NCBI RefSeq assembly: GCF_963853765.1
Contig: NC_088853.1
Coordinates: 39,308,001-39,372,000 of the forward strand
DNA from: Magallana gigas
Taxonomy: Eukaryota
Length of the DNA: 64,000 nt
Direction: 5' to 3'
Shown here: positions 22,096 to 61,441 of the stretch, piece after piece
Layout: every line of letters begins with the position of its first letter
Position numbering within the stretch: the first letter of the stretch is position 1
The notes under the pieces: model-generated
Database searches by the model: none
What the model saw: only the letters and a program-made list of their open reading frames with translations
Told to the model about the DNA's origin: nothing
Made by a program: the position numbers and the translations under genes

Positions 22096-22146
<51 letters not shown>

Positions 22147-24182
22147 CATGTACCACTATTAATAACTTATTCGTCCGAACAAATCCTAATTCGTCCGAAC
22201 AAATCCTAATTCGTCCGAACAAATCCTAATTCGTCCGAACAAATAAGTTATTTGTCCGAACAAATAGCTAATTCGTCCGAACAAATCCTAATTCGTCCGA
22301 ACAAATAACTTATTTGTCCGAACAAATCATAATTTGTCCGAACAAATAACTTATTTGTCCGAACAAATCCTAATTCGTCCGAACAAATCCTAGTTCGTCC
22401 GAACAAATCCTAGTACGTCCGAACAAATAACTTATTTGTCCGAACAAATAACTTATTTGGCCGAACAAATAGCTAATTCGTCCGAACAAATCGTAATTCG
22501 TCCGAACAAATAATTTATTTGTCCGAACGAATCCTAATTCGTCCGAACAAATCCTAATTCGTCCGAACAAATAACTTATTCGTCCGAACAAATAGCTAAT
22601 TCGTCCGAACGAATAAGATTATTATTTTTTCTCATCTGGCCCTTCCACGCCGCCGTACAAATATAAAAAATAAATCAACAAAAAAAAAATGCGGGTAAAG
22701 TTATGATCAATAATTTTAAAAGTATCTGTAATAAAAATCTGTAGAGGTATGTTGTAGGCTGTCCTTTACAAATAACGCATTGCGATGTCTTGGACAAAGT
22801 TGATTGTGTCTGTTTGGCCTGTAAACTTGGTTACCATGGTGATCAGTGTGAACGAGGTATATTCTTATATGCATTCATATTTTCTTAATGCCATTCATAT
22901 TTAAATACATGCATGTTGTATTACTACAAACTATCATTCCAAGACAACTTAAGCAGTTTAACAGATCTATTTACTAGTTATAAATTCAGGTATTCTTGCT
23001 CAACGCATGCGATACACTACTTAAAAAAACGACATTAGCTATCGCATATTTCAAAATACATGATTTATCTGTACATGAAAGGTAATTTGTCGTCTGGCTC
23101 ATATAGCTAGTTCGATTGATCTAGAAATATAAACCATTTTTAAAAAGTTACGTTGCTTACAGAATGGGTTTGATGATAAGTAAAAATAAGCAATGTTCGA
23201 TCTTTATGCTATAAAATTGTATATTAAGTATTGATTATTATTATCCAAAATGAATGATGCACTTTAGATGATCAAAATGTTGAATGGTTAGTTAAATATG
23301 TTATACATTAATGTTTATGCTATTGCATTGCTATCTTAAATAATCTCAATACTCACCCAAATTGATCCTAATACATTGCATACATTTATATATTTTTTTT
23401 CTTCATGAAGTTAAAATATCACAGGATAAACCTTTGCCATTTAGTGAACTGAATGTTAACTGATTGGTCTGGAAAGGTGACTGAATGGCATAGCTATGGC
23501 ATTCAATTACCTTGCAGTTACCGATCACTCACATTTCAGTTCACTGAATGGCAGAGATTCATCATGTGTATATCTTCTCAAATAAGTTTGATTTTGTATA
23601 TATTTGTCTACATTCATGCAACCTAACTTTGATTTAAAAGAAACAAAACAAATGAATGCAAATTGAAAAAAAAATCAAACCAGCTTTACTTTTTAAGTTT
23701 GTGAGATTTTGGTATAATTGTAGGGTATTTAATTGATGTAAGATTTAACATTTTATTTTAAATTGACATTTTATTCAAAATTTGTTATATCATCCTCAAC
23801 TGATGTCGAAGTTAAAAGCCAGACTCCTGTACTGCAAGGTCTGATCGGTGGCCTCAGTGTCTCGATTTTAATCATCGTTGTACTTATTCTCTATACTGTA
23901 CAAACAAGGTGAAATATGATATCAATAACTGCGAATTTTTTTTCATTTGAATATTTACAATTTGTCAATTTGACATCAATTATAAACGAAATATATTTTT
24001 TACAAACGTTTAGAATTTCAATGAGAAGGAACCCTCCATTATTGAATGCAATAGAATTAAGGAATGACGCCAACTCATGTGTTACTGGAAGCAATTATAC
24101 TGTGAATAGTTACACTGAGTTCGGATGGTCCAGTAACACTGACCCATATTATACGATCCAGGAGATGACAGGTGTAGTTTAG
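16334..24182 (+). CDS. Receptor copy A: signal peptide / F-type-lectin-like domain / EGF / TM / cytoplasmic tail
   Basis: Exons 16334-16418 (MFIPYGQSIWHINVFILWFCLLGASQSY), 17726-17959 (ENVALHKRAFQ...NAVDG...WWVNLG), 18434-18688 (...LGFSLYVSN...CEVEVY), 22758-22856 (EGF-like), 23791-23908 (TM; its acceptor is TAT instead of TAG) and 24014-24182. All frames are compatible. Confidence 0.8.
19403..20222 (+). repeat. 20/21-bp satellite array in the left arm of the foldback element
   Basis: Interspersed variants TTTGTTCGGACGAATTAGGA, TTTGTTCGGACGAATAAGTTA, TTTGTTCGGACGAATTACGA and ...TTACATA. Confidence 0.95.
20237..20278. repeat. (GA)n microsatellite, mirrored as (TC)n at about 22098-22143
   Basis: Direct inspection; lies within both foldback arms. 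Confidence 0.95.
20331..20452. mobile_element. Small MITE-like insert within the foldback arm, mirrored at about 21922-22046
   Basis: Short inverted ends CATGCGC(A/G)GATCCAG ... CTAGATCCGCGTAT around a G-run-rich core. Confidence 0.55.
22162..22618 (-). repeat. 20/21-bp satellite array in the right arm (inverted, shorter)
   Basis: Units TTCGTCCGAACAAATCCTAA and TTTGTCCGAACAAATAACTTA are reverse complements of the left-arm units. Confidence 0.95.
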
Positions 24183-34856: not shown

Positions 34857-34859
<3 letters not shown>

Positions 34860-34941: not shown

Positions 34942-34946
<5 letters not shown>

Positions 34947-41200: not shown

Positions 41201-42737
41201 GTCCAGTGTGCATCAGCGCATGATATAATTATATACAAATGAAAATAATTTATACACACAACATAAAAGTAAAATTATAATCAATTATTTTGAGATACAT
41301 CTGCAATAAAAGCGTTTGTTGTAGGTTGTCCGGTACAAACGACTCATTGCGATGTGTTTGACGCAGTTGAATGTGTCTGTCTGGCCTGTAAACCTGGTTA
41401 CCATGGTGACACGTGTAAAGGAGGTAAATTTTTATATATATATATTTATTTTTTCGTAATGCCGTTCATATTTAAATACTTGGTGTACTACTACATTCAT
41501 GGTGCACTACTTTCATTTCAAGACAACAACTTTAGCAGTTTAAAAGATGTATTTACTACTTATAAATTCAGGTATTCTTGCTCCACGCATGCAACACACT
41601 ATTAAACAATGTATACAGTTTACGCTTTTATTAGCAAAACAAAAAACAAAAACAAAAACAAAAACTTCCCAAAAAAAAAACACGACATTAGCAAGTGCAC
41701 GTATCCAAATACATGATTAATCTCCACATGAAAGGTGATTTGTCGTCTGACTCATATAACTATTTCGATTGAAACATAAACCATTTTTAAAAATTTACGT
41801 AGCATATAGAATGAATATGATCACAAGTAAAAATAAGCAATGTTCGATCGTAATGCCATACAATTATATATCATGCATTGAGTATTAATTTACAAAGAAA
41901 ATGATGCATTTTAGATGATCAAAATGTTGAATGCTTAGTTAAATATGTTATACAATGCTAATGTTATTGCAATGGTATCTTAAATAATCTTATCTGCTCA
42001 TTCAAAATGATCATAACACATTGCATACATCAATCTTCTGTCTTCATGAACTTAAAATAAATCTTTCCAAATAAGTTTGATTGTGCATATATTTATGTAC
42101 GCCATGTCACCTAACCTTGATTTGAAAAAAAAAGCAACAATAAAAGCAAATTTGAAAAATAAACCCAGCTTTATTTTTCTAGTTTGTTAGATTTTGGTAT
42201 TAATTGTGCGAATGTCATGGTGTGTTTCTCTGATGTAAGATTTTACATTTTATTTGAAATTGACATATTATTCAAAATTTGTTATAGCATCCTCAACTGA
42301 TGTCGAAGTTAAAAGCCAGACACCTGTACTGCAAGGTGTTATAGCATCCTCAACTGATGTCGAAGTTAAAAGCCAGACACCTGTACTGCAAGGTCTAATC
42401 GGTGGTCTCAGTGTCTCGATTTTGATCATAGTTGTACTTATTCTCCATATTGTACAGACAAGGTAAAATACAAAATCAAAATTGTGAATTTTATTTTATT
42501 TTTATATTACAATTTATCAATTTGAAATGAATTATAAATGAGATTTGTTTCTTACATTATTTAAGAGTTTCAATGAGAAGGAACCATCAAATATTGAATG
42601 CAATAGAATTAAGAAATGGCGCCAACTCAACAAACTCATCTGTTACTGGAAGCAATTATACTGGGAATAGTTACACTGAGTTCGGATGGTCCAGGGAGAC
42701 TGACCAGTATTCTACGGAGATGACAGGTGTAGTTTAG
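38233..42737 (+). CDS. Receptor copy B (F-type-lectin-like / EGF / TM / tail), apparently intact
   Basis: Exons 38233-38317 (MYFLFCHSICLLGVLSMLSSMLEVTEAY), 39464-39697, 40172-40426, 41325-41423, 42288 (or 42345)-42462 and 42566-42737. Canonical splice sites, open frame. Confidence 0.85.
42281..42394 (+). repeat. Perfect 57-bp tandem duplication spanning the TM-exon acceptor
   Basis: gttatagcatcctcaactgatgtcgaagttaaaagccagacacctgtactgcaaggt x2 (42281-42337, 42338-42394). Confidence 0.95.
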
Positions 42738-45339
42738 AACTTATTCTTTAACACAATCGAAAGTTTTTCAAGTCATTTGCCCTTAGAAAAATTGAAAATG
42801 GAAGGAAATTGAAGAATAATGATAATTTCAGCAAATATACAAAAAAGTCATGTATTTTTGAAATTGATTTGGAGGTTTTTGATTAATCAATCAAATATTT
42901 ATGATATTTTAGAAAGATTATATTGTACACAACTTTCTTGCAACGGATAACAACTGATATTTGTGATTTATGTAAAATAAAAAATACTGATCAACTAGAA
43001 TTTTAATTGATGTTTTGTTCATGTTGATAATGTATATAACTGTTCTGTATTTTGAAAATAACGAATAATGTCATAGTACTATTTTTTTTTTTTTTTATTA
43101 CAGTAACCAATTAATAATGTATGTCAAAAAAGATGTTTGAATATTTGCTTTCATAAAATAGGATAATAACGACATATGTGTATGAGTTCTGAAATATAAT
43201 AAAGTCGGTCTTTTTCTTATGCTGCATTGTTATTTACTGATCATTGAGATTATTATATATCAATTGAATTAAATGATGTGTAAATTCCATATCTTAAATG
43301 TTAATTTAATTCCATACTTAAGCCAAATTTTTACAATTTGTTAAAAAAAAAACCAAAAAAAAAAACCCCGAAAAAAAAAATATCTCTGACAAAATGGTGA
43401 ATAGTTAAGACATTCTGCTCTATTTTCTACATTTCAGACGAAAAAAAAAATATTCTCAATATCTTTACTATGAACTTGAGTGTTGATTTTACGTCCTTCT
43501 TTCTTTTTTTCTGTTTTTATTTTATTTTTTTATTTTTTTATTTTTTTGTTGCTATTCAGAAATATTTTTATATGACTAGGTACATGCACATGCTCCTGAA
43601 AAGGATAATGTTCATTATGCCCAGAAGTCGGACAAATATTGTGCTTCGATGGTAGCTACATTAATTCCTCGCACAAATCGAAGAAAACTGAAAAAATTGA
43701 TTTCATTTTATGATTCAATGACAAATTGTCATTTCAAACTGAATGTTATCTTGCGAGGAAAATTTTAAGGTGTCAAAACATGTGTAAGACGTCTGTTGTT
43801 CCGTTATTGAAATAATACGAGGTGCTTTGAAATATTGATGCCTGTTGTTGCCGGAGTAGGGTTAAAAAACCACCTGAGCTTGTTTTCAATCACATGTGTA
43901 ACTTCGACGTAAACAAACCCTATGGTCTTTTCTTGGAGCGGGGTTATTAAAATGCATATCAAGTGTTGTTCTAAGAAATACTCTGGGCAAGCTTTACATA
44001 ACTTTGATTGGAACTAATAATGTGTATCAAAGGTTGCATTGTTTTTGTTAAATATATTTAGAGATATTCAATTATGTTAAGAGTGACACCTGCACAAAGC
44101 ATAGGATTGAAGTCAAAATTAAACACACACAAATCGCGAAATTTCTTTATATAACAGAAATGATAATAACCTATTGTAGCATTTTGGAAAATCCTAATCT
44201 ATGTTTGGAAAATGAAATCATCTAATAGCATCTTACCTCGTAAGTCAAGTGGAGGTGAATATAAGTTTGAATTTTATCATCACAATATCAGCCAATTAGA
44301 GGGCTAGGAATTAATCAAACATGACCTGTGGTGAAAGCGAACAGTGCTCAAAATCAACATTACGAAGGAAAGATACAAAGCAGGATCACAAAGCAAACAA
44401 GGACATCTAAAATAATTAGAAGTAGGATCAGCTGCCATGGAGGAGTTAGAATCCTCTTCTGACTGGTCACACCCGCTGTGATCATTCGCAAATATTTAAC
44501 CAATGTCCAAAGACACAGATTGGTTTTAAATACAACATTTATCTTATAAATTACTTGCAGCATATATTTCACGTGTCGTCTGGTGCTAATGTCGTTACAT
44601 ACCATAACACACAAAATGATAAAAAGTGATGCAATGCTTTATATACATATAACATGTTTGTATACTTGTATGCTTGTTTATCAAAATGCGTGTGCATCCA
44701 ATTTATCAGGATCGAAATTGAATGAATATTAAAGTTTAAAGAACAAATTGAGGTCAGTTTGTGACCAATGATTCTTTGAGTATATAACCTTATTATAAAT
44801 ATTATTATTTCTTCATTTTCAGGTATATTTAATTTCGTATATCAATCCAACAAATCTACAGAAATTGGTATCTCTTTTCAGATAATTTCATTATTCTCTT
44901 TGTTTCATTCATACCTCTGATTTTGAACGAGTAATGACATCCTTTTATTTTGTCGAATAAATGAAGAAAGATAAACAATATGGTAACTTATTTTCAATAA
45001 GCTGTGTAGTTGTTAGTCATAAGTGCCTAATTTGAAAACTCTTAAACTAATGACAGAACTGAGGTATAATTACATCTATCTATAACTATGTGTTTCATGG
45101 GCAGATCAAACGTTTACTCATAGATTTTGAAATGTTCAGGTTAATATTTCATTGTATGAAACAAAATGACAAAATAGCGCAAAAAGGAATTCACATAATT
45201 TAAGGAGTACACTCTCACGACAGCCGTTTTGTGTCCAATCAGTCAAGCAATAAAGAAAATCAAAAAGTATTTACAATTTTTATAAATGGTTTACTCATAT
45301 CGGGTAATTTTAACACAGGTGTTACCAATAGTGCGCATT

Positions 45340-45720
45340 TCAGCGACGAAAACGTGTTTACCTGCTGTTGTCGCCAGATACCCTAGTTAGGCTGTCCTTT
45401 CCGTGTCAAATCTGTCAGCGGCGCTGCATTAGCTGAACATATTCTATAAAAACAAACACGTCCCAAGAATGACCTTACCTGTTTCGTAGTGGTAGGTGTT
45501 CAAAACTCTTGGATAGCTGCGACTTTCTCGATCGTATAGTAGGACAACTGATGCGACTTCAGCTTCTGACTTGCGTAAAAAACCCGATTTTCTTCATTTT
45601 CATCTTCCTCTTGCAACAACACTCCACCAATACCTGCATCTGACTGCAATATAAATGGTTTTATAGTAAACAAATAGAACAGCCCGAGTATAGTCCATTA
45701 CTTACAAATACCTGAAGTGA
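45340..45720 (-). mobile_element. Permuted Gypsy fragment, copy 2 (more decayed)
   Basis: Same sequence and junction (ATC GAG AAA GTC GCA GCT ATC) as 34380-34730. Confidence 0.7.
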
Positions 45721-48700
45721 CAAAATTTGAGGCACCAAAAAGGATATGAACATTAAAAAAAACCAGAGGTACATTACAGAAAAATGTATTGATATGACAT
45801 ATACATATTATAAGATTTTGACCTATGTGCGAAAGATGTTTATCTAATAGCAGTTTATACTTGCAAATTCGTGTTTTTGATACTCTGGCTAGCTTACTTT
45901 ATTTGAATGATAATTGAAATATCTTTTCCATGGCGTTACATAACATTTACTGTATATCAATTGAGGCGATGCTAATGTATTAAAGCGATTATAAGTAGGA
46001 AAAGCCATGTGAACTCTAATTTATTGTTTGAAACGATGATCATATTTCAGATTAAACATTGTTACGATTACAGTCAAATTCTATACAAACTTACAACATC
46101 AATATAATGAGCTTATTGATCTTTTTAGGGGGGAGGGGGCATTCCTACTTAAAATTATGTTCGTTTGGGTTTATTTCTGTGTAAGCTGTGTGCTATAAGG
46201 GGTGGATTTGTGTGGTTTTTAGGTCACATGACATTAGGATATAAATGGTAATGCGGGTTTTGTGGTCATTTTACCGCTCGTTAGGACGTAGTGAAGGTGT
46301 AATGACTACCAGTAAATTACTATTATAATTATAAATGTAATATGTGTGTTCAATATTATGGTGTTGGTGTGTTTGTTTTGTTTTGTTATTTTGTTTTTGT
46401 AAGGATATACTGTATAAATATTCTAACAAGCAGCAATACATATTCATGAGTTTGTTTGGTTTTGTTTTTAATTGGTTCAGCGTATTCATACTATATCAGA
46501 GTATAATTTTATTTATATTCAAACGAAAGGAATGAGGTAGAATATAAAGTATATTCTCTATTCTTGAAGTGTGCACTAATGAATGATTGGTCCAGTACCT
46601 TTCTAAACAAAAGTATTGCTTGGAATTTATTATCTTAGAAAAAATATTAACTTATATACCTGTACTATCAAACCCATATGATCCAAATCATGTCAAATTA
46701 CACGATGTATTTGTGGCAATCTTATATTTCCGTCACAAAGCGAAACGAATGGAGGGACTGCAGCAAATCATTCTTTTTAAAATTTATTACTCTGTGACCT
46801 TCATCACACACAGCATTGGCGCTTCTTCAGAATATTGAAGACACTTATAAACTCAAAAGTAAATTTTGTTTTTACTCCGCAAAGCTACTGATGGATGTTT
46901 TGCATAGCAATGGACATCAGTTGTTTTGATCACAAAACACAAACAAGAGCTGCAAACGATAGCATTGCCTAGTCGCCTAACTTAAAGTCATTTTTGATAA
47001 TTGTCTAATTAAACATATTTCTATTACATAATGTAAACATTAATGTATATTTTCGTAAACTATTTGGTCAAACAAAGAGAGACGATTTGAAAGTTGGGTT
47101 AAAATAGCTCATTTCATAATATATACAAACGATAAACGGAGTTTTTAAATATCATCTGAAAACAAAAAAATCCTTCTGGGGGGTTTTATATTTTGTTATT
47201 TAGCATATTCATAACAAAGGATTTGTTGTTTTCAGTGAGGGAATATGTCTACAGATCAAAATACATTATAAAAAATGCATAGTGCATTGTAACGTTGCAA
47301 AATTTAATTTTTGATTTTTCTTTGTTTTGTTTTTTGTTTTTGTTTTTTTTTGGGTTTTTTTCTGTGTTTTTTTTGTAAGGGGGGGGGGGGGGGTGAAGTC
47401 TCTTATTTACAGCCTCTTACATATGTTTTTAAGAGAGCCACTTATAAACTTTCCTTAATGAAGGTTATTGTTCATTTGAGGTTTTTTTTTTTTTTACATT
47501 TCATATGTTCATAAACGAGTAAGTATAAAATCTACAGTTGTATTTCAATTATCATTTCTTTGAACACTTTTGCTAACTTTACAGTTTCTTTCTGCTAAAT
47601 CCGTCATCTTATATTTTCAAAGATGTGTCATTGTAAACATTTAACTGAAGCGTAATATACTTACAATCTGTATATAAATTATACGAAATTAAACCCAATC
47701 TCGACAGTACGATTAAATAATGTTGATTGGAGGCAAGAACCCACAAAAGGGAGTACAAGAATCATTGTTTTAGTAACAAGTCTTGTCAATGAAAATTGCA
47801 GGCATTTATAATTTGAGCCAATAATTGTAAATACTAATGGAAGTGGCCATCTCTCCTGTTTCTGATGGTACAGTTTGTGTCGTTTTCCTTGTTTTAAAAT
47901 AGATATTTGTGGAAACAAAAAGGAAAATATTATTTGCGTAAACAAAGTGCCATGTTACTACCTTGTACAACTTCTCTAATCTGTTGTTTTTTCTTCCTTA
48001 AAGACACACGTCTCTGACAAAACGGCGTCATCAGAGATGTTTTTAGTTATTACCGAAATATATCAAAGAAATATGAATGTGGTGATGCAAATACCTTATA
48101 TCATATAAACTATATTATTGTCTAACATTCATATTAACTAACATGTATGAATTTACTTTGTTTTACGTTATAAAATATAATGATAGTGTAAGAATTTTAA
48201 CGCTCTGTACTACAGCAGTACTTGTGTAGCAAAAAACTATGATTTAATGAAGCAATTTGTCTAAACATTCTAACAAACTACATATATGATTTGAATATGT
48301 ATTGTCACCTCCATACTTCAAGAGCTACACGTTTCTCTATGTAAAGGAATTTAGACCAATGGAAAATTGGCAATTATTTCGAATTAAAAGTGTGCTGTTT
48401 ATCAATTATCGCTAATAATAATAAATCAGAAATATTTCATTTATCGATTTAAAACATATAATATCATGTACGTGTACAATTAAAAGCGTGTGCGTGATAT
48501 ACAATGTTATACATCTACAGTTATGGTAAACAATTCTAAATTCATTATTCAGATAAAATCATGATTGACTTATACGTCTGATTATGAAAATAAAAAAAAA
48601 ATTGTTGAATTTTTATAACGTGTTCTAACATTGAATCACAATTAAAGGAATAAGCTTTCTTAAAATTCAAGAACAGCAACGGTAAGAAATCGCAATGCTT

Positions 48701-48981
48701 GCATTATTAGTATTTACTATTTATATCTATAAAAAGGAAGATAGAAAAGTAACACAGAACCTTTTATGTCTCTCACCGAGAGAAAAATACGGAAATTCTG
48801 CAATTGCATTGGTCTCGAGGAAAATATTATCATGCAATCCTATTCCTGTTTTTTTTTATTCTTAATCTTCCTTTTCAATACTACGCCCCTTTAAACCTCT
48901 ACATATTTAAAATCAGTCTATTCTTTAAATATCGTCAGTTTTTAGAAAGATCTGAGAATACCAAGCCTACATTATTCTAAG

Positions 48982-51900
48982 ATGTACTTTCTTTTCTGTC
49001 ATTCTATGTGTCTCCTTAGTGTCCTGTCTATGTTGTCCAGTATGTTAGAAGTATCAGAGGCGTATGGTGAGTTAATGTTTTCGCTTACTTTATAACAAAA
49101 AAGTTACTTTTGATCAAGATCATATTATTATTATTATTTTTATCTTATTTATCAGAATTAAATAATTATTTTAACTTTTTACCTTGTTGTGGGGGGTATA
49201 CACAAAGTGGTAACCTTATTAGGGCGTTAAGATAAGTTATTTTTTTCTATATCATCACGCATTAGACTTAATTCTTTTTGTCAACATCTTAACACTTTAT
49301 GGTACATGTATGTAACTAAGAAAAATGGTTAACCAATACACACATCAATATAATATTTAATTGACAGAGTATACCTCTTAACATATTGGAAACAAATGAT
49401 GTTTTTCCTTCTGGCACCGCCGCCACACAAAAATGACGTAATCAGCCTCAATTCTCAAATGAAGTTTAAATAAATACGCGCAAATGACCTTTGCATTTTA
49501 CTTTCTTTCTTTTTTCTTTTTGCATCATCGTTTATAACTCAGCTTGAATCGTGTTTTCCCATTATCTATCGCTGTTCCGTGACTTCCGGTGACGGAATCT
49601 ACTTGAGTCAATTTCAAAGATTCATTTTCCTTTATTTGAATATTTTGGTTTAGATACTATTTGATATAAGATCCAATTTAAAAAAAAAAATTCGAGCATC
49701 GATATTGTACCTATCTTCATCAAATGTTGAAAGATACAGACCTTTCAACGGAATGAATGTTTTCAATTGCATGTTTGAAGTTATACTTGTATATTTGAAG
49801 CATGTTCTTATTAGCATTTGTTGAAAACTACATGTAATTATATTTTGAATAGAAAAAAGGGCGATATTGTGATTTAAAATTACCTTATCTCATACCCTCC
49901 ATCCTCGGTAATGAGCAAACGATCGATTGTACATGTATTAATCCATAAATTTGTACGTGTATGTGTTTAAATACAAATCATATTATACAGTATATTCATT
50001 GTCTATCACTTAATGAACTTAATGATAATTTGTAAGATTTAACCTACAGAAAATGTTGCCTTACACAAACCTGCATTTCAATTGCATCCGTATGACAGAA
50101 ACAATAAAACATTCGACGCAACTAACGCAGTAGATGGACTAAAGTCTGACTTATCTTGGACGGGAGGTCAATGTGCTGTATCAGCTCTTGGAAAAGAAAT
50201 CGCCACCTGGTGGGTAAACCTCGGCAGACTTCACGTCATCCACCACATCACTGTGTATTTCAAGACAAATAATGGCATTTGGGGTAGGGTATACCTATAG
50301 TTAATTTATTATTTTCGAACCAGTCATCAAACAAAAATATTGATCTCGTTAAACCTGTATTAAACTTTGAAAAAAAAACATGTAAAAAGTTGAATAAAAT
50401 CTCTTTAAGTAACAGATTTTTTTTAAAAAAGATATTTTTAATGTTTCTATATGAGCTAATACATGTAAAAAAAACACTCAGAGGTTTCAGATTTATATTC
50501 AATGATTATGGGAACAAACAAACTTGGCGCTTGTGCAAAACCTGTGTTCTTACAATGTACAACATACATGAAATATGTATTGGTTTTAAATGAAATAAGG
50601 AGAATATTTAGAAATTATGTGTTCAGACAGACCATTTTACTTGGTAATCAGTCAATGATCGCGGCAATGGGAGAATCAATTAACTGTTAAAGTATTGACC
50701 CTTAAGCGGTGCTTGAAGTGAATAATTACATTTTTACAGGTTATCTAATCATTTTGGTAATAGTATATATCCTTTGCAGATTTCACAAACAATGCTACAT
50801 CCACCTTTCTAGGATTTTCAATCTATGTTTCCAACACAACAGATAGATTGCAAGGAAAATTATGTTTCAAGGATAATAACTTTAACACAAGCACTATTCC
50901 TGCAGTGTTTAACACAATATGTTATGTACAAGGACAATATGTCATCTACTACAACGAAAGACTGAAAGGGGTTACCTATCCTAGCGATTATAATTCAGAT
51001 GCTGAAAATGATTTATGTGAAGTCGAGGTGTATGGTAAGATTTGCTTACTGTGGTTACTGTGGCTACTCTAGTCTGGCGTGGCTTCCTCTTAAAGAAAAC
51101 TGAAGTGTTATTTAATTTGTAATTCTAGGAATATGATTAGTTGTAATTTTTTTTTCTCAAATCGCAATTCTCAAACATACATCTGTTTAGAAAATATTTA
51201 GTGTCACAATTCACTACTTAAAATTTTGTTTTTTATCCATTACTATTTCTGGAAATTTACTCTAGATTTTTTTTGTCTACTGTTTTAAAAGATCGGTTCA
51301 AAATACATGTATATTTACAACAGAAAATGTTAGTAAATACATATTTGGCAATTAAACGCAAATTTCAAATCCACATTGAACGTTTTGATTAAATAGTAAT
51401 GGTAAAAGATAATTTACATTATATGTTGGAAAATTAAAACTGTTCCAATTTGTTTTCAATAGGATTACTGGCTAATTCATTTCTTTTAGGTTCAATTATT
51501 ATTGAAAAAAAGTGCATCTTCAGATGATTAACGTTTCAAAAAATATTTCGTTTAAAATCATATTTATAANNNNNNNNNNNNNNNNNNNNNNNNNNNNNNN
51601 NNNNNNNNNNNNNNNNNNNNNNNNNNNNNNNNNNNNNNNNNNNNNNNNNNNNNNNNNNNNNNNNNNNNNNNNNNNNNNNNNNNNNNNNNNNNNNNNNNNN
51701 NNNNNNNNNNNNNNNNNNNNNNNNNNNNNNNNNNNNNNNNNNNNTTAGATATATTGCTTTTTTAGCTATTAAATTTGCTGGTTTCATTTGTTATATAAGA
51801 TTTTTTTATACAACACTTAACGCCTTATTTAAACAACTGATTTGATTTTCTGCTCTCTACAATTTTTTAAAGTTAGAATCACCTCATACAAACCTCATAT

Positions 51901-53430
51901 TAAATGTAGTTTGGTAAGTAATTTTTAAGTCCCACAACACAACATAACTGTAAAATTATAATCAATTATTTGAGATACATCTGCAATATAAGCGTTTGTT
52001 GTAGGTTGTCCGGTACAAACGACTCATTGCGATGTGTTTGACACAGTTGAATGTGTCTGTCTGGCCTGTAAACCTGGTTACCATGGTGACANNNNNNNNN
52101 NNNNNNNNNNNNNNNNNNNNNNNNNNNNNNNNNNNNNNNNNNNNNNNNNNNNNNNNNNNNNNNNNNNNNNNNNNNNNNNNNNNNNNNNNNNNNNNNNNNN
52201 NNNNNNNNNNNNNNNNNNNNNNNNNNTTGAATACATGGTGTACTTCTACAAACTTTTATTTCAAGACAACAAATTTAGCAGTTTAAATGATTTATTTACT
52301 ACTTATAAATTCAGGTATTCTTGCTCAGCGCATGCAATACACTATTAAACAATGTATACAGTTTACGCTTTTGATAACAAGAAAAAAAAATGAAAAAAAC
52401 GACATTAGCAAGCGCCCATATCCAAATACATGATAAATCTTCACATGAAAGGTAATTTGTCGTCTGGCTCATATAACTATTTTGGATTGATAAAGAAACA
52501 TAAACTATTTTCAAAAATTTACGTTGCATATAGAATGAATATGATCACAAGTAAAAATAAGCAATGTACAATCGTAATGCCATACAATGATATATCATGT
52601 ATTGATTATTTATTTACAAAGTAAATGATGCATTTTAGATGATCAAAATGTTGAATGCTTAGTTAAATATGTTATACAATGCTTATGTTATTGCAATGGT
52701 ATCTTAAATAATCTTATCTGCTTATTCAAAATGATCATGATACATTGCATACATCAAAATTTTTTTTTATGAACTTAAAATATATCTTTCCAAATAAGTT
52801 TGATTGTGTATATATTCATTTACGCCATGTAACCTAACCTTAAATTAAAAGAAAAGAACAACAATAAAAGCAAATTTGAAAAAAAAACTTTAAACCTGCT
52901 TTATTATTTTAAGTTTGTAAGATTTTGGAATTAATTGAACAAATGTCATGGTGTATTTATCTGATGTAAGACTTTACATTTCAATTCACGTACATAATTT
53001 GAAATTAACATTCTATTCAAAATTGTTATAGAATTCTCAACTGATGTCAAAAAAAATAACTGCACTCATGCACTGCAAGGTCTGATCGGTGGACTCAGTG
53101 TCTCGATTTTGATCATCGTTGTACTTATTCTCTATATTGTACAGACAAGGTAAAATACGATAACAATATGGTGAATTTTATTTTATTTTGATATTAAAAT
53201 TTATCAATTTGAAACCAATTATAACTGTGATTTATTTCTTACGTAATTTTAGAATTTCAATGAGAAGGAACCCTCCAATATTGAATGCAATAGAATTAAG
53301 GAATGGCGCCAACTCAGTCAACACTCTTGATGCTGGAAGCAATTATACTGTTAATAGTTACACTGAGCTCGGATGGTCCAGGATAACTGACCCATATTAT
53401 ACGATCCAAGAGATGACAGGTGTAGTTTAA
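48982..53430 (+). CDS. Receptor copy C (F-type-lectin-like / EGF / TM / ITAM-like tail)
   Basis: Exons 48982-49066, 50050-50283, 50780-51034, 52005 to about 52103 (end lies in the N gap), 53032-53149 and 53253-53430. Open frames throughout the visible sequence. Confidence 0.85.
51570..51744. other. Assembly gap (175 N)
   Basis: Run of N. Confidence 1.
52092..52226. other. Assembly gap (135 N) covering the end of the copy C EGF exon
   Basis: Run of N. Confidence 1.
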
Positions 53431-56229
53431 AACTTATTCTTTAAAACAATCGAAAATTTTTCAAGTCATTTGCCCTTAGAAAAGTTAAAAATCGACACAA
53501 ATTGAAGAATAATTATAATTTCAGCAAATATACATGTATTTTTGAAATTGATTTCGATGTTTTTGATTAATCAAAGCATGAACGCAGAAATATTTATGAT
53601 ATTTTGAGAAAGATTATATTGAACTCAATTTTTTTGAGTTTAACGCAAATAAACTGATATTTGTGATTTGGTTACAAAAAAAACTACAGATCAATTAGAA
53701 TTTTAATTGATGTTTTGTTCATGTTATTAATATATATAACTGTTTTGTATTTTTGAAATAACGAAAAATATCATAGTACTAAAACTACACTAATTTATTT
53801 TAGTACACTAACCAATTAATAATGTATGTCAAAAAAGATGAAAATTCCCCTTAATATATATTTTGAAGAGTGTGCACATTAGAAAACATGAAACAATGAA
53901 TCAGTTGATAACTGTAAATTGAAATGTATTTTTATGTTATAGACTTTTGAATATTTGCTTTCATAAAAAAGGATATTAACGATATATGTGTATGAGTTCT
54001 GAAATATAATAAAGTCGTTTTTTTTTTCTTGTGCTGCATTTTTATTTAGTGTTCATTGAGATTATCATATATCAATTAAATATAATGATGTGTGCGTTCA
54101 TTATCATAATTGTTAATTCAATTCCATATTTTAGCCAATTTTTTACAATTTATTAAAAAAAAAAGAAAATAAAAAATAAAAATTGAACCATATCTGACAA
54201 AATGGTGAATAGCTAAGACATTCTGCTCTATTCTCTACATTTCAGACAAAAAACCCATCAAAGTTTTGGGTGTAGATTTAACGTCCCTTTTTCTGTTTTT
54301 TTAATTTATTTTTTTTAATTTTTGTTTGTCTTTGTTTTGTTGCTATTCAGAAATATTGCTATTTTTATTGGTTTATATGATTTGGTACATGCACATGCAC
54401 CTGAAAAGAATAATGTTCACCAAGCCTGGAGGTCGAAAAAATAATGTATTTCTATGTAAGCTACATACATTCATCGTACCAATCGAACAAAACTGATAAA
54501 AATGATTTCATTTTTTGATTCAATGACAAATTGTTACTGTCATTTCAAACAGAATGTTATCTTGCGAGGAAAATTTTAAGGTGTCAAAACATGACTTAGG
54601 CGAATTAAAATCCCAAATCCCCTTTTGAATTGTTTCCGCCTTGGACAGAGACTGATTTTTGATGAATAAAAATACATGTGTAAGACGTCTGTTGTTCCGT
54701 TATTGTAATAATACGAGGTGTTTTAAGATATCGATGCTTGTTATTGCCGGATTAGGGTAAAAAAAACCACCTGAGCTCGTTTTCAATCACATGTGTAACT
54801 TCGACGTAAACAAACAATCTTGCCTTTTTTTTGGAGCGGGGTTATTAAAATGCATATCAAGTGTTGTTCTAAGAAATACTCAGGGGAAGCTTTACATAAC
54901 CTTGATTGGAACTTATAATCTGTATCTAAGGTTGCATTGTTTTTGTTTAATATATTTAGAGAAATTCAATTATGTTAAGAGTGACAACTGCACTAAGCAT
55001 AGGATTGAAGTCAAAATTAAACACACAGACAAATCGCAAAATTTCTTTACAAAAAAAAAAATGATAATAACCTATTGTAGCGTTTTGGAAAATCCCACTC
55101 TATTTTTGAAAAATGAGAACATCTAATGGCATACTTACCTCGTAAGTCAAGTGGAGGCGAATATAGGTTTGAATTTTATCATTACAATATCAGTCAATTA
55201 GAGGGCTAAGAATTAATCAATCATGGCATGTGATAACGAACAGTGTTCAAAATCGGACATCTAAAATAATTAGAAGTAGGATTAAGTGCCATGGAGGAGT
55301 AAGAATCATCTGCTGACTGGTCACATCCGCCGTAATTATTCGAAAATATTAAAATCAATGTCCATGGACACAGATTGATTTTAAATACAACTTTTATCTT
55401 ATCAATTATTTGCAGCATATCTATAACGTGTCGTCTGCTGCTAATGTCGTTACATACCAGGACACACAAAATGAAAAAAAAAGTGATGCAATGTTATACA
55501 TGTATATACATATAACATGCTTCTATACTACGATTCTATCAAAATGTGTGTGCATCTAATTTATCAGGATCGAAATTGAATGAATATGAAAGTTTAAAGA
55601 ACAAATTGAGGTCAGTTTGTGACTAATGATTCTTTGAGTACATTACCTTATTATAAATACTACTATCTATTCATCTTCAGGTATATTCAATTTCATATAT
55701 CAATCCAACAAATCTACAGAAATTAGTATCTCTTTTAAGATGATTTCATTATTCTTTTTGTTTCATTCATACCTCTTAGTTTTGAATGAATAATGACATC
55801 CTTTAATTCTGTTGAATCAATGAAGAATGATAGACAATATAGTAATTTCTTTTCAATCAGCTGTGTAGTTGTCAGTCATAAGTGCCTAATTTGAAAACTA
55901 TTAATCTAATGACAGAACTGAGGTATAATTACATCAATCTATAACTATGAGCTTCATGGACAGTTCAAAGTTTAATAAGTTGACCCGAAAATTATTAAAG
56001 ATAGCAAGTGACACTCATATAGTTTAAAATGTTTAGGTTAGGTTAATATTTCATTTTTTGAAACAAAACGACAAAATCGCACGAATAGGAACTCGTATAA
56101 TTTAAGTAGTAAAATGTTACGACAGCTGTCGTGTGTCCAATCAGTCACTCAATACAGAACAATAAGTATTTACAGTATTTATAAATGGTTTACTCATATC
56201 GGGTAATTTTGTCACAGGACACAGGTGTA

Positions 56230-56610
56230 CTTCAGCGAAGTAAACGCATTTTCATGTTGTTGTCCCCAGATACAGACTGTCCTTTTCGTGTCAAATCTGT
56301 CAGCGGTGCTGAAATTGCTGAAAAGTTAGGTATAATTCTTCTATAAAACCCAACAAGTCCCAAGAATGACCTAACCTGTTTCGAAGTGGTAGTTGTTCAA
56401 AAGTCTTGGATAGCTGCGACTTTCTCGATCGTATAGTAGGACAATTGATGCGACTTCAGCTTCTGATTTGCGTAAAAAACGAGTTTCTTCACTCAGTCTT
56501 CCTCTTGCAAAAACACTGCACCAACACCTGCATTTGACTGCAATATAAATGGTTTTATAGTAAACAAATAGAACAACCCGAGTATAGTCCATTACTGACC
56601 AATACCTGAA
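56230..56610 (-). mobile_element. Permuted Gypsy fragment, copy 3
   Basis: Same sequence and junction as 34380-34730. Confidence 0.7.
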
Positions 56611-56714
56611 GTGACAAAATTTGAGGCACCAAAAAGGATATGAACATGAAACAAAAACCAGAGGTACCCTACAGGGAAAAAAAATGCATTCATAAATCTA
56701 CTGATTGTGACATA

Positions 56715-57299
56715 TCTATACTACTATATTAAAATAATTGACTCGAATTTGGTCTTTAATACCGAGAAATCGGAAGTATATTGTCTTTTGTTTTATATAT
56801 TTTATAAACATTTGATTACATGCAAAAAGGTTACATTATATTTGTTAGGAGAGTGAAGATAGAATGCTATATCGTAAAAATGAATAATGTCCCACGAACC
56901 CAGTTTTACAAAGTAAATACGTGTACGTTGGTGAAAAGGTGTTCATTCTTCCATTCTATGGATTAAAATGTTTAGTTGAAAGGTATTTGCAGTCTCAAAA
57001 AGGTTTTTTTGGGATGAATTCGACGGTTATTTTCAAGGCAGTTTCATTAACTTTCTCCAAAATCGTTCCAGAGCGATTTTTTGTTACAATACGGATATAA
57101 GGGAGGCATTCTAACTGTGGTGAGGGCCTTTCCCGAGACACAGTTGGATTATTCAAACTAACGAAAGTGTAGTAAAATTAATAGCATTATTAAAGGCTTA
57201 TAGCTTTGTTATGTAAATGTCAATAATAAGGTGTGTCAATGTACATATTTCGTAATTATCCAGTACGCAATGTCAACCCGTGCACGGGTCAAAGTCTAG
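56715..57299 (+). mobile_element. Non-autonomous canonical Helitron (585 bp)
   Basis: Starts with TC, ends with CTAG, lies between A and T with no TSD, and has the palindrome ACCCGTGCACGGGT (57276-57289) just before the end. Absent in the A and B spacers. Confidence 0.85.
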
Positions 57300-57443
57300 T
57301 ATACATTATAAGAAGTTGACCTATTTGCGAAAGCTGGCTATCCAATAGCAGTTCATACTTGCAAATTCATGTTTTTGATACTCTTGCTAGCTTACTTTAT
57401 TGGAACGATAAATAAAACATATTTGCCCCGGCGTTACCTACCA

Positions 57444-57645
57444 TTCAGGCACGTAGCATCGGGGGGGGGGGGGGGGGGGGGGGCAGCCCCATCCTCCCCA
57501 CTTTTTCTCGCAGCAACAATTTGTCTAATATTTACATATAAAAAGTTGAATTATCATGGAGCCCCCCCCCCTCACTTTTTTGGGAGAATGTAAGAAATTG
57601 AAAATATGAAAAAAAGGAAATGAGGAGTAAAATTGAAGTTATACA
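57444..57645 (+). mobile_element. Truncated MITE-like insert
   Basis: Begins CAGGCACGTAGCATC followed by G and C runs; absent from the paralogous spacers; second terminus not found. Confidence 0.45.
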
Positions 57646-58422
57646 GTACGCCATGCTAATGTATTAAAGCAATTATAAGTAGGAAAAGGCATGTGAACTC
57701 TAATTTATTGCTTGAAACGATGATCGTTGTTCAGATTATACATTGTTACGATTTCAGTCAAATTCTAAACAAGCTTAGAACATCATTATAATGAGCTTAA
57801 TGGTCTTTGTTGGGGGGGGGGTTTCTTTATTAAAACTATGTTCGTATTGGTTTGGTATAATTCTGTGTGAGCTATGTGATATAAGGGGCGGATCTGTGTG
57901 GTTTTTAGGTCACGTGACATTAGGATATATATAGTAATAGCGCAGGTTTTGTGGGCATTCTACCGCTTGTTAGGACATAGTAAAAGTGTAATGGCTACCA
58001 GTAAACTGTTATTATGATTATATATGCAACATGTGTGTTCAATATTATGTTGTTGATGTGTTTTTTTGTTATGAAATATACTGTATAAATGTTCTAACGA
58101 GCAGCAACCCATATGCATTTGTTTGTTATTTTTCAATTGATTTAGCATATTCATACTATATTAGATTATAATTATTTTATATTCGAAATAAAAGAGTAAG
58201 GGAGAATATAAAGTATGTTTTCGATTCTTGAAGTGTGTACTAGTGAATGATTGGTCCAGTACATTTCTATACAAAAGAATTGTTTGTAATTCCTTATCTT
58301 AGAAATAATAATTTAATACCTCTGCTATTAAACCAAAATCATGTCCAAATACACGGTGTATTTGTGACAATCTTATATTTCTGTTACAAGGCGAAACGAA
58401 TGCACGGACTCCAGCAAATCAC

Positions 58423-59273
58423 TTTTTTGCGTGGACCCTGAGGTCCACGCAGAAAATATATAAGTGAGGTTAAACTGGATGCTATGGGGGAAAATTCAAC
58501 CTGCGCATGAGCGAGCCTGGTTCCTGTGCGTAATGGGTAGCTCAGGGAACCAGTCGATCCCACGTTTATCTGAATCGGGATCGGGATTCCGTGCCATATG
58601 CACACATAAGTTCAAAAGCGTTGTAATTGTAAAGTTGTCGGTAAACAGTACAGAAACAAAGTATTCCTTTGAAAGAAATGATTGGCATGTGATATGAACT
58701 ACCAGTATTATGAAATATGTTAATGTTATGCCGAAACTACAACATGCATCAAATAGCATAATTTGCAATGTTTTGTTGTTTTCCGAATACACATGTAACT
58801 TAACTTTACTTTTACAGTAGGCGAGGCTAGAAAACTTCCTGATTAATTTTTTAAGCATTTAAGTATGATTGAATAATTATGTCACAGTATAAAAGTTTAA
58901 ATCTCAAGAAAAATGCATCAAAATATGAAATTTTTAATTTACACAAAGCTGTCACTGCAGAGTTAACAAAGTAGTGCGAATCGTAATGTGTGCGCAAATA
59001 GTAGAATTCACCGCATGCCTGATACTATATATGCAAACTTCTTTCATAGATAGATCATAATTATTTTAGAAGTATGAATCCTTTAAATTCTGAGATAAAA
59101 GTCAGGGCTGTACATACATGTATACGTAATACAACATACAAATTGAGTGGTTAAAAGAAGAGGGCTAGAGTCGGTGGAATCTCTGATAATCTTAAGGCTT
59201 TCACGTTTTCGTTGGAAACACATGCAAATGGTCCACGTATTGTAGTCCTTTTTTAAAGGAAAGCAACTTGTTA
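58423..59273 (-). mobile_element. HINE-like element specific to the C-D spacer
   Basis: 10-bp hairpin TGCGTGGACC-CTGA-GGTCCACGCA (58428-58451); subterminal repeat GGTCCACG at 59230-59237; end CTTGTT; inserted in a T-run that is uninterrupted in paralogs. Confidence 0.75.
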
Positions 59274-60256
59274 TATTTATTACTGTGTGACCTTCATCAC
59301 AAACAGCATTTGTGATTCTTCCGAATATTGAAGACACTTATAAACTCAAAGTAAATTTCTTTTTTACTCCGCAAAGCTACTGATGGATTTTTGCATAGCA
59401 ATGGACATCAGCTGTTTTGATCACAAAACATCAACAAGAACTGCGAACGATAGCATTGCCAAGTCGTCTAACTAAAAGTCATATTTTGATATTTGTCTAA
59501 TGAAACATATTTCTAATTAATAATGTAAACATTTATGTATGTTTTCGTAGAATATAAATGATATTGTCGAACAAAGAGAGATAACTTTGAATTTTGGGTT
59601 GAAATAGCTCATTCATAATACAAACTAAAAATAAACGGATTTTTTAAAAAATCATCTGAAACAAAAAATCCTTTTAGGGGGTTTTATATCTTGTTATAAA
59701 GCATATTCATAATAAAAGGGTTGTTGTTCTCAGTATGGGGGGGGGGGGTGTATGTCTACAGACCAAAATACATTATAAAAAATGCATACATCATTGTAAC
59801 GTTTCAACTTTTAATTTTTATTTTTTTTTTTTGTATTTGGTTCTTTTTTTTAGTAAAGGGGGGGGGGGGGAGTCTCTGATTAACAGCACTTTTACAAACG
59901 ATTTTAAGAGAGTCACTTATAAACTTTCCTTAATGAAGGTTATTTTTCATTTGAGTTATGTTTACATCTCATATGTGCATAAAAACATAAGTATGAAATC
60001 TACAGCTGTACTTCATTTATCTTTTTCTTAGAACATTTTTGCTGACTTAACAGGGTTTTTTTTCTGCTAAATCAGTCACCTTACATTTTCAAAGATATGT
60101 CATTGTAAATATTTTACTGAAGCGCAATATTCTGTAAAATCTGTATATAAACTGTACTTAATTAAGGTGGAATAACACATTCTCACAAAATGGCTGACTG
60201 CTGATCAAAACGACATTTCATTTTATTAAAAGGATTTTATGAACTGAAACATGTAT

Positions 60257-60330
60257 CTTACTCCATAGTAAAGTAGATAAAGTGTCGGACTTGTGATCCG
60301 TAGATTCCGAGTTCGAATCCCACAGGGGCT
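60257..60330 (+). other. tRNA-derived sequence (paralog of 36680-36752)
   Basis: CGGA-CTTGTGA-TCCG stem-loop and GAGTTCGAATCC B-box. Confidence 0.5.
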
Positions 60331-60926
60331 TTCGTTGTTACTTACTGGAATAATTTTTTTAGATATTCGTTTTATTTATCCCCAAACTGCAAAATTTTCG
60401 CTTATTTGACATTTGTACTGTTTATTTATCATTATATCGTTCATTATAAAAAAATCCTGTTAATTTGAGTGGCTTTTTCCAGGTGTTTTATTCAACCTTA
60501 AACCCAATCTCGACAGTACGAATAAATAATGTTGATTGAAGGCAAGAACACAAAAGGGAGTACAAGAATGATTGTTTTAGTAAAAAGTCATGTCAATAAA
60601 AATTGCAAGCATGTATAATTTAAACCAATAATTGTAAATACGAATGGAGATGGCGATATCTCCTGTTATCTGATGGTACAGTTTGATACGTTTTCCTTGT
60701 TTTGAAATAAACATTTGTGGAAACAAAAAGCAATATATGATTTGTGTAAACAAGGTGCCATGTTACTAAGTTGTACAACTTCTCTAATTTGATTTTTGTC
60801 TTCCTTAAAGGCGCACGTCTCTGACAAAACGGTGTCATCAGATATATATTATTGTTAGACATTCATATTAATTAACACGCATGAACTAACTTTGTTTTAC
60901 ATTATAAAATTAAAATGTAATGATAA

Positions 60927-61441
60927 AAGGACTTTTTGATCAACATTTTCTTTTTCTTATTTTATGTATGAAATAGTTTACTTGCTCATTTTGAATGACT
61001 GACCAAAATTTGAATGTTAGAAGTCAAGTATTAAGAAAAGTACAGAGGTAAAAAAAAGTTATTGTTATGTTAACAAAGCTGGAGTCTTATATTTGCTTAC
61101 AATTTATGTATAGTGTGGAATTACCATTTTTTAATAAAATGATTCGTGGCAAACAAGGTAAACTGATCAATATGTTAAATAGTTAATATAATAAACATAA
61201 AAAAGCAACACTTGATTGAGACTTATACCAATTAAACACATTTATAAACCATAACAAAGCTCGAGTTTTGTTTACAAAACAAAGATTTTCAAACTTTGTT
61301 TCTTGCTTATAACTCAATATTTGACTTTTAAATTTTAATAATGCATTTACCTTACCAAGTACCAATATTAACCATTCTAAACATTAAAAAAAAAAGAAAT
61401 GAAAAGTTAAATGTTGACCTCAAATCGTGTCCAAGTCCCTT
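60927..61441. mobile_element. Kolobok-like non-autonomous DNA transposon
   Basis: Right end TTGACCTCAAATCGTGTCCAAGTCCCTT|TAA and degenerate left end TAA|AAGGACTT...TCAACATTT. The empty site in the A spacer reads gataatgtaagg. Confidence 0.5.

What the first reader, a model, noticed from the sequence alone, without database searches (positions are those of the whole stretch)
53359..53406. ITAM-consensus motif in copy C, weakened in A and broken in B
The copy C tail reads YTEL-GWSRITDP-YYTI, i.e. YxxL-x8-YxxI, which fits the ITAM consensus YxxL/I-x6-8-YxxL/I. Copy A has YTEF-x8-YYTI. Copy B has YTEF-x8-YSTE because of substitutions and a 2-codon deletion. Paralogs with near-identical ectodomains may therefore differ in signalling (activating vs decoy). 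Draper/MEGF10 signal through ITAM-type tyrosines and Syk-family kinases (established); that these genes do so is inference.
Basis: partly seen in the sequence, partly recalled or inferred. Interest (0 to 1): 0.7.

Follow-up and report, generated by a model that had tools for sequence, protein, structure and literature searches.

The report
ITAM-like tail in oyster receptor paralog
One of three tandem Pacific-oyster genes for a small lectin-like membrane protein ends in a tyrosine motif that fits the immune-signalling ITAM pattern. The fit comes from one letter change to an older non-ITAM motif in a fast-evolving tail, so it is a lead to test, not evidence of signalling.

Summary
Window 53359-53406 encodes YTEL-GWSRITDP-YYTI. 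Copy A (24111-24158) has YTEF-x8-YYTI, and copy B (42672-42719) has YTEF-x8-YSTE with a 6-nt deletion.

The stretch lies in the true last coding exon (53253-53430) of Magallana gigas XP_065922980.1. This is a 322-aa type I membrane protein: signal peptide, F-type-lectin-like domain, one EGF, a TM helix, and a 58-aa disordered tail. Spliced transcript contigs of two sister lineages confirm every junction. They run straight past the stop, so the ACAG|GT donor is not used.

The Leu is kept in the C orthologue of C. angulata and in an older C. gigas model. Lineages A, B and a fourth lineage (O) all have Phe, so Leu arose by a single TTC>CTC change. The shared pattern is YxxΦ-x8-YxxΦ, not ITAM.

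The tail evolves nearly neutrally (dN/dS 0.5-0.9, against 0.2-0.4 for the ectodomain). This tail type was found only in these close relatives. A shuffled tail matches the ITAM pattern in 1-2% of trials.

The proteins are not Draper/MEGF10 members: no EMI domain, one EGF, no NPxY. The "activating versus decoy" idea is untested. Oyster Syk and an ITAM receptor (CgIgR) are already published. Interest is low to moderate.

The parts
53359..53406 (+). Copy C tail motif YTEL-GWSRITDP-YYTI, which fits the ITAM consensus. The Leu codon CTC is at 53368-53370.
53253..53430 (+). Last coding exon of copy C. It encodes the 58-aa cytoplasmic tail and ends with stop TAA at 53428-53430.
   Evidence: The C-terminus is identical to XP_065922980.1.
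53032..53149 (+). Stalk + transmembrane exon of copy C. The donor is AG|GTAAAA, phase 2.
   Evidence: AF2 predicts a helix at residues 235-268.
53431..53670 (+). Probable 3'UTR of copy C, with AATAAA at 53648. The end point is approximate.
   Evidence: homologous transcript contigs run colinear with the genome for 94-155 nt past the stop.
52005..52091 (+). EGF-like exon of copy C. Its 3' end lies in the N run 52092-52226, which was left unfilled.
50780..51034 (+). Second exon of the F-type-lectin-like domain, copy C.
50050..50283 (+). First exon of the F-type-lectin-like domain, copy C.
48982..49066 (+). Signal-peptide exon of copy C (ATG at 48982, donor G|GTGAGT).
   Evidence: It matches the N-terminus of XP_065922980.1.
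24111..24158 (+). Copy A tail motif YTEF-GWSSNTDP-YYTI. The tail exon is 24014-24182.
42672..42719 (+). Copy B tail motif YTEF-GWSRETDQ-YSTE, with a 6-nt deletion. The tail exon is 42566-42737.

Best explanation
The stretch is the end of the real cytoplasmic tail of a small type I membrane protein, M. gigas XP_065922980.1. The protein has a signal peptide, an F-type-lectin-like beta-sandwich, one EGF, a TM helix, and a 58-aa disordered tail. It belongs to a young tandem family (A, B, C, plus a fourth lineage O seen only in other samples). The family shares two tyrosine motifs eight residues apart, Y-T-E/Q-F/L and Y-Y-T-I/V, that is YxxΦ-x8-YxxΦ. Copy C fits the ITAM consensus only because of one derived TTC>CTC (Phe>Leu) transition. 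If the tyrosines are used at all, I think they most likely act as generic YxxΦ-type short linear motifs, meaning tyrosine-based sorting or endocytosis signals read by adaptor complexes. For those signals Phe, Leu, Ile and Val at +3 are interchangeable. On that reading the F/L difference does not split the paralogs into 'activating' and 'decoy' receptors. Shown: the motif, the gene model, the topology, the polarity of the change, and the weak constraint. Inferred: the sorting-signal function.
For: Gene model. My spliced A and B models equal the NCBI proteins exactly, and C's model ends in the same tail. Spliced transcript contigs L007 and L008 reproduce all exon junctions and continue colinear past the stop.

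Topology. A signal-peptide exon is present. AF2 gives a confident beta-sandwich, a TM helix at 235-268, and a tail with pLDDT below 40. Basic residues follow the TM.

Polarity. A, B and O all have TTC and only C has CTC. In the tail exon O is the most distant lineage (dS 0.22-0.42, against 0.14-0.17 among A, B and C).

Conserved pattern. All 16 tails examined carry Y-x-x-F/L. Lineages A, C and O carry YY(T/S)(I/V). Only the three C-lineage tails match the ITAM pattern.

Weak constraint. Tail dN/dS is 0.48-0.90, against 0.21-0.39 for the ectodomain.

Restricted distribution. This tail type occurs three times in the 564-Mb genome. Two searches of 5.8 billion proteins found only close relatives.

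No family-wide ITAM. None of 13 more distant relatives with a TM and a tail match the pattern.
Against: Leu is retained in the C orthologue of C. angulata and in an independent older C. gigas model, so it is not a private or assembly variant. From memory and not tested here: pY-T-E-L is close to what Syk-family SH2 domains prefer. The x8 spacing is canonical, and oyster has Syk and a working ITAM receptor (PMC6994640). The sorting-signal function is itself untested, and the near-neutral dN/dS also fits no function at all. All dN/dS values rest on few substitutions (4-25 per comparison).
Confidence: 0.45

Rival explanations
1. Neutral by-product. The tail is a fast-drifting, largely unconstrained appendage of a young lineage-specific gene family. 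Neither the tyrosines nor the F/L difference has a specific function, and the ITAM match is chance.
For: Tail dN/dS is 0.5-0.9. In the motif-bearing distal half dN is about equal to or above dS in most pairs. Indels occur in every lineage, and B lost the second motif through a deletion and a Y>S change. Reference copy A has a broken TM-exon acceptor, and an annotated isoform drops the tail altogether. The chance of a pattern match is 1-2% per tail and needs only one transition here. No homologous tail was found outside close relatives.
Against: The first-motif Tyr, the GWS that follows it, the first Tyr of the YY pair and the last six residues E-M/L-TGVV are unchanged in all 16 tails. Meanwhile the membrane-proximal half accumulates indels. 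Transcripts are spliced and in frame in several samples.
Confidence: 0.33
2. Genuine ITAM in copy C. After ligand-driven clustering, a Src-family kinase phosphorylates both tyrosines and the tandem SH2 domains of oyster Syk dock. C would then be an activating receptor, while A (Phe at +3) and B (second motif lost) would be weak or decoy partners with similar ectodomains.
For: C is an exact match to YxxL-x8-YxxI in a disordered cytoplasmic tail. Leu is kept in three independent C-lineage sequences. CgSyk with two SH2 domains and the ITAM-bearing receptor CgIgR are reported in C. gigas (PMC6994640). Drosophila Draper-I (ITAM) versus Draper-II (ITIM) is a precedent for variants that differ in signalling (PMC4503800). 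The B and C lectin-like domains are 93% identical.
Against: The ITAM state is derived by one conservative transition and is absent from A, B and O. There is no sign of purifying selection on the tail. The tail is not conserved beyond very close relatives. No acidic residues lie upstream of the first Tyr. The link to Draper/MEGF10 fails on architecture. No phosphorylation or binding data exist, and no expression profile was obtained.
Confidence: 0.14

Closest known systems
Canonical ITAM receptors and adaptors (Ig-alpha/beta, FcR-gamma, DAP12; in oyster, CgIgR, PMC6994640)
   Same: Copy C has YxxL-x8-YxxI in a short, disordered cytoplasmic tail of a type I membrane protein. The species has a Syk kinase with tandem SH2 domains.
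   Different: The consensus occurs in only one of four lineages and is one substitution from YxxF. The tail is not conserved and not visibly constrained. No phosphorylation or Syk binding has been shown. The ectodomain is lectin-like, not Ig.
Draper / CED-1 / MEGF10 / Jedi engulfment receptors
   Same: Single-pass membrane proteins with EGF-type modules and tyrosine motifs in the tail. Draper-I signals through Src42A, its ITAM and Shark (PMC4503800).
   Different: No EMI domain, one EGF instead of an array of about 15, and no NPxY. The tail is 58 aa rather than about 150-200 aa. From memory: Draper's ITAM has x11 spacing, against x8 here. The N-terminal domain has an F-type-lectin fold.
Bivalve-expanded 'F-lectin-like domain + laminin-type EGF' proteins (often auto-annotated MEGF10/11-like or scavenger receptor class F, e.g. 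K1PUW9; the neighbouring unit D)
   Same: Same N-terminal domain: 618 library hits at E<=0.001, with 50-80% identity in the second domain exon. Same phase-1 exon structure. Unit D, next door, has the same domain plus at least four EGF repeats.
   Different: A, B and C are minimal versions with a single EGF and their own lineage-specific TM and tail. The tails of relatives are unrelated.
Tyrosine-based YxxΦ sorting signals (from memory, e.g. transferrin receptor YTRF, TGN38 YQRL)
   Same: Y-T-E-F/L and Y-Y-T-I/V fit YxxΦ. They lie more than 30 residues from the membrane in a disordered tail. Interchange of F, L, I and V matches what is seen across the lineages.
   Different: No trafficking data exist. 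YxxΦ is a very loose pattern, so the match by itself carries little information.
F-type lectins (Anguilla agglutinin 1K12, striped bass 3CQO, lectinolysin, SpX-3 CBM47)
   Same: Best Foldseek matches of the predicted ectodomain: E 1e-10 to 1e-8, TM-score by target 0.72-0.82.
   Different: Sequence identity is about 20%. Pfam gives only a sub-threshold PF22633 hit. Fucose-binding residues were not checked.

Membership tests
[quoted passage not shown] | YxxL/I-x6-8-YxxL/I sequence | tested here: met
   Copy C reads YTEL-x8-YYTI. The motif is not met in A (YTEF), B (YTEF...YSTE) or O (YTQF...YYTV).
[quoted passage not shown] | Located in the cytoplasmic domain of a membrane receptor or adaptor | tested here: met
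   There is a signal-peptide exon, a TM helix at 235-268 followed by basic residues, and a disordered tail. The NCBI model and the transcripts agree.
[quoted passage not shown] | Both Tyr and both +3 Leu/Ile conserved among homologues | tested here: not met
   The first-motif Tyr is present in all tails. The second Tyr of the YY pair is Ser in reference copy B. The first +3 residue is Phe in three of four lineages. Leu is a derived TTC>CTC change.
[quoted passage not shown] | Dual tyrosine phosphorylation and binding of Syk/ZAP-70/Shark tandem SH2 domains | not testable with these tools
   This needs phosphopeptide binding or cell assays. The complex predictor cannot model phosphotyrosine, so no job was sent.
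[quoted passage not shown] | A Syk-family kinase is present in the organism | not tested
   Taken from the literature: CgSyk with two SH2 domains and a kinase domain co-precipitates with CgIgR (PMC6994640).
Draper / CED-1 / MEGF10 | N-terminal EMI domain followed by an array of EGF repeats | tested here: not met
   Pfam finds no EMI and no EGF array. The gene has one 33-codon EGF exon. The N-terminal domain has an F-lectin fold.
Draper / CED-1 / MEGF10 | NPxY motif in the tail | tested here: not met
   None of the 16 tails listed contains NPxY.
F-type lectin / galactose-binding-like domain | Beta-sandwich fold matching solved F-type lectins | tested here: met
   AF2 pLDDT is 80-95 over residues 30-195. 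The top Foldseek hit is 1K12 at E 1.3e-10, followed by CBM32/47 modules.
F-type lectin / galactose-binding-like domain | Pfam family score above the gathering threshold | tested here: not met
   PF22633 scores 16.4-17.3 bits against a cut-off of 27.8.
YxxΦ tyrosine-based sorting signal | Y-x-x-bulky hydrophobic in a cytosolic tail, at least 7 residues from the membrane | tested here: met
   YTE(F/L) and YYT(I/V) lie 33-48 residues after the TM in lineages A, C and O. The pattern is loose, so this is weak evidence.
YxxΦ tyrosine-based sorting signal | Adaptor (AP-2 mu2) binding and Tyr-dependent internalisation | not testable with these tools
   This requires cell-biological assays.

The most novel reading that the evidence does not exclude
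A young, lineage-specific tandem cluster of lectin-like receptors in Magallana has evolved a 'paired receptor' set by point changes in the tail. Copy C would have gained a Syk-recruiting ITAM through one Phe>Leu change before the gigas/angulata split. Copy A would be a weak or non-signalling partner, also made as a TM-less soluble isoform. Copy B would have lost the second tyrosine motif. This would be an invertebrate parallel to vertebrate activating/inhibitory paired receptors, caught at its origin.
Probability: 0.1. Interest if true: 0.6.

Novelty: new member of a known kind. Interest (0 to 1): 0.25.

Why it matters
If the copy C tail really recruits Syk, this cluster would show how an activating receptor arises from a non-signalling paralog by a single nucleotide change, inside a family with almost the same ligand-binding domain. 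It would also add a lectin-type ITAM receptor to the one Ig-type example known in oysters. As things stand, the value is mostly corrective. The motif is real and the gene model holds. However, the match is derived, lineage-restricted and sits in a weakly constrained tail. The Draper/MEGF10 analogy does not hold.

Tried and rejected
(1) Laying RNA reads. No reads were laid. Direct splice and polyA evidence for copy C itself is therefore missing. The only hint is that runs guessed to be RNA hold 13-25% of the words of 52230-54200, close to the roughly 27% that is exonic.

(2) Exact look-up of the ATG-started tail ORFs of A, B and C. None is in the protein collection, so I could not estimate the population frequency of the Leu allele.

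(3) Pfam on the tail alone gave nothing.

(4) Paper searches for the LOC and UniProt identifiers and for the SRA run accessions found nothing. The species of lineage O is unknown.

(5) Rooting the A/B/C/O clade with distant outgroups left it unresolved. Polarity therefore rests on three lineages against one and on the tail-exon dS values.

(6) I considered complex prediction with the Syk SH2 domains and did not run it. Phosphotyrosine cannot be modelled, and I do not claim binding.

(7) ITIM/ITSM, Grb2-type YxN and class I PDZ readings of the tail were checked by eye and do not fit.

(8) The N runs 51570-51744 and 52092-52226 were left unfilled. The 3' end of C's EGF exon is therefore not given.

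Full report
**The observation**

Window 53359-53406 translates to YTELGWSRITDPYYTI. The homologous stretches are YTEFGWSSNTDPYYTI in copy A (24111-24158) and YTEFGWSRETDQYSTE in copy B (42672-42719). A three-way DNA alignment shows B's 6-nt deletion and its P>Q and Y>S changes. It also shows that C differs from A and B at the first Tyr+3 position by CTC against TTC, at window base 53368.

**Genomic setting**

The window holds tandem repeat units of about 10.8 kb:
- A, partial, at about 17356-26374.
- B at about 34010-44870.
- C at about 45000-55860.
- D from about 55860 onward.

The genome has 564 Mb in 29 contigs, and the window lies on a contig of 76,070,991 bp. NCBI Magallana gigas proteins sit on a contig of exactly that length.

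**Gene model**

I worked out the exons from open frames, splice sites and phases. For copy C they are:

| Exon | Window coordinates |
|---|---|
| Signal peptide | 48982-49066 |
| Lectin-like domain, exon 1 | 50050-50283 |
| Lectin-like domain, exon 2 | 50780-51034 |
| EGF | 52005 onward; the 3' end lies in the N run 52092-52226, left unfilled |
| Stalk + TM | 53032-53149 |
| Tail | 53253-53430, stop TAA at 53428-53430 |

My spliced translations of A and B are identical to XP_065922985.1 and XP_065922973.1. XP_065922980.1 (322 aa, 'uncharacterized protein') is copy C and ends in the same tail.

Two spliced transcript contigs from public runs reproduce every exon junction. L008 is A-like and comes from SRR8856672. 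L007 belongs to a fourth lineage that I call O and comes from SRR31729890. Both continue colinear with the genome for 94-155 nt beyond the stop.

Direct read evidence for copy C itself could not be obtained. The only hint is that runs guessed to be RNA hold 13-25% of the sampled words of 52230-54200. That is close to the roughly 27% of this stretch that is exon plus 3'UTR.

**What the protein is**

Pfam gives only a sub-threshold hit to PF22633, the NedA-like galactose-binding domain (16-17 bits against a cut-off of 27.8), and weak EGF hits. An AlphaFold2 model built on a 32-sequence alignment shows:
- a confident beta-sandwich (pLDDT 80-95),
- a small EGF module,
- a TM helix at residues 235-268,
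- a tail with pLDDT below 40, meaning disordered.

Foldseek places the ectodomain with F-type lectins and CBM32/47 modules. The best match is 1K12 at E 1.3e-10, with TM-score by target 0.72-0.82.

The domain belongs to a large bivalve expansion. A library search gave 618 hits at E<=0.001, many of them joined to arrays of laminin-type EGF repeats. Unit D next door is such a gene, with at least four EGF repeats and no similar tail.

A, B and C are therefore minimal members of that family. They are not Draper/CED-1/MEGF10 proteins. They have no EMI domain, a single EGF and no NPxY, and the tail is 58 aa long.

**Distribution and polarity of the motif**

The genome holds only three tails of this type. 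Two searches of 5.8 billion protein clusters with the tail, or with TM plus tail, found only close relatives. Cluster members supplied 16 tails:

| Lineage | Sources | Motif |
|---|---|---|
| C | M. gigas reference, C. angulata XP_052695868.1, older C. gigas XP_011441105.1 | YTEL...YYTI |
| A | six sequences | Y(T/N)EF...YY(T/S)I |
| B | four sequences | YTEF...Y(S/Y)TE, deletion shared by both species |
| O | four Logan transcript proteins; the tail ORF is seen on more than 80 contigs | YTQF...YYTV |

Only lineage C matches the ITAM pattern.

A protein tree could not resolve the order of A, B, C and O. In the tail exon, however, O is the most distant lineage. Its dS to A, B and C is 0.22-0.42, against 0.14-0.17 among A, B and C. 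A, B and O all carry TTC. Phe is therefore ancestral, and Leu is a single derived transition. It predates the split of the gigas and angulata sequences. What the family shares is YxxΦ-x8-YxxΦ.

**Constraint**

Nei-Gojobori estimates give dN/dS of 0.21-0.39 for the lectin-like domain and 0.48-0.90 for the tail. In the motif-bearing distal half, dN is about equal to or above dS in most pairs. Counts are small, at 4-25 substitutions per comparison.

Indels occur in every lineage. On the other side, several residues are unchanged in all 16 tails: the first-motif Tyr, the following GWS, the first Tyr of the YY pair and the last six residues E-(M/L)-TGVV.

Identity between paralogs is mosaic. Signal peptide and ectodomain are closest between B and C. 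Stalk and TM are closest between A and B. The tail is closest between A and C. This suggests exchange between the copies. 'Near-identical ectodomains' holds for B-C (93%) but not for A-C (84%).

**Chance**

Shuffling the C tail gives the ITAM pattern in 1.1% of trials with x6-8 spacing and 2.4% with x6-12. None of 13 more distant relatives with a TM and a tail match it. A single such match is mildly unusual. Across all membrane-protein tails of a genome it is expected many times, and here it needed one conservative substitution.

**Interpretation**

The machinery for ITAM signalling exists in this species. CgSyk has two SH2 domains and co-precipitates with the ITAM-bearing receptor CgIgR (PMC6994640). 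Draper-I against Draper-II is a precedent for variants with opposite signalling (PMC4503800).

Nothing in the sequence evidence singles out copy C as an ITAM receptor beyond the text match. The conserved pattern tolerates F, L, I and V at +3. That is what YxxΦ-type sorting signals tolerate. From memory, Syk-family SH2 domains do not.

I rank the readings as follows:
- 0.45: a shared generic YxxΦ-type motif, with the F/L difference having no consequence.
- 0.33: no specific function.
- 0.14: a genuine ITAM in C with A and B as weak or decoy partners.

All three can be separated by phosphopeptide-SH2 binding, chimeric-tail signalling and Tyr-mutant trafficking assays.

**Novelty and score**

ITAM-Syk signalling in oysters is published. 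This would be at most a new member of that kind, with a lectin-type ectodomain. The interesting version is a paired-receptor set born by one substitution. It is not excluded, but I give it about 10%. Overall interest is 0.25.

Noticed in passing
window 23789-23790 (copy A, just before the TM exon 23791-23908): In this assembly the TM-exon splice acceptor of copy A reads AT instead of AG. A 98%-identical allele from another sample (L005) has AG, as do copies B and C. NCBI annotates an isoform X2 (XP_065922987.1, 227 aa) that skips the TM exon and ends after three out-of-frame residues. That isoform would be a soluble protein without any tail.
   Followed up: partly
window 42282-42344 (copy B): A 57-nt tandem duplication includes the TM-exon acceptor. 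This gives two usable acceptors and two annotated isoforms of 320 and 339 aa (XP_065922973.1 and XP_065922968.1). The same duplication is in C. angulata XP_052694183.1.
   Followed up: partly
copies A, B, C, whole genes: Mosaic similarity between the paralogs. Signal peptide and ectodomain are closest between B and C (89-93%). Stalk and TM are closest between A and B (95%). The tail is closest between A and C (85%). This suggests gene conversion or unequal exchange between the tandem copies.
   Followed up: partly
window 55860-64000 and L004 (window-equivalent 64001-72000): Unit D is a diverged paralog. Its lectin-domain exons are 61% and 76% identical to C's. It has at least four MEGF-type EGF repeat exons and no A/B/C-type TM or tail within 8 kb. 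It is probably the long 'MEGF10/11-like' form from which the short genes derive.
   Followed up: partly
L006, L007, L009-L016 (Logan contigs, mostly the SRR14864xxx-SRR14865xxx series): A fourth lineage, O, encodes a 323-aa protein with tail YTQF...YYTV and an A-like signal peptide. It is common in public runs and is spliced as mRNA. Its tail type was not found in this assembly. It is either another species' orthologue or a presence/absence paralog. The species could not be determined.
   Followed up: partly
L008 positions 322-571 against window 18434-18689: The A-like transcript contig uses an acceptor 6-7 nt downstream of the annotated one in the second lectin-domain exon (ATAACAG|AAAC). This breaks the reading frame, so it is an unproductive splice variant or an assembly error.
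   Followed up: no
window 53410-53427 and the homologous ends of A and B: The last six residues, E-(M/L)-T-G-V-V, are invariant in all 16 tails. They are the best-conserved part of the tail. From memory: a C-terminal valine signal for ER export is a possible reading. It does not fit class I PDZ ligands.
   Followed up: no
P0001, P0003, P0115 (distant relatives of the same domain family): Their unrelated cytoplasmic tails carry an acidic patch followed by Y-(Q/V)-E-L. This resembles hemITAM-type single YxxL motifs. The Y-T-E-F/L in A, B and C may be a remnant of this recurrent motif.
   Followed up: no
Nothing was laid, and I did not send these letters to any search tool afterwards.
   Followed up: no
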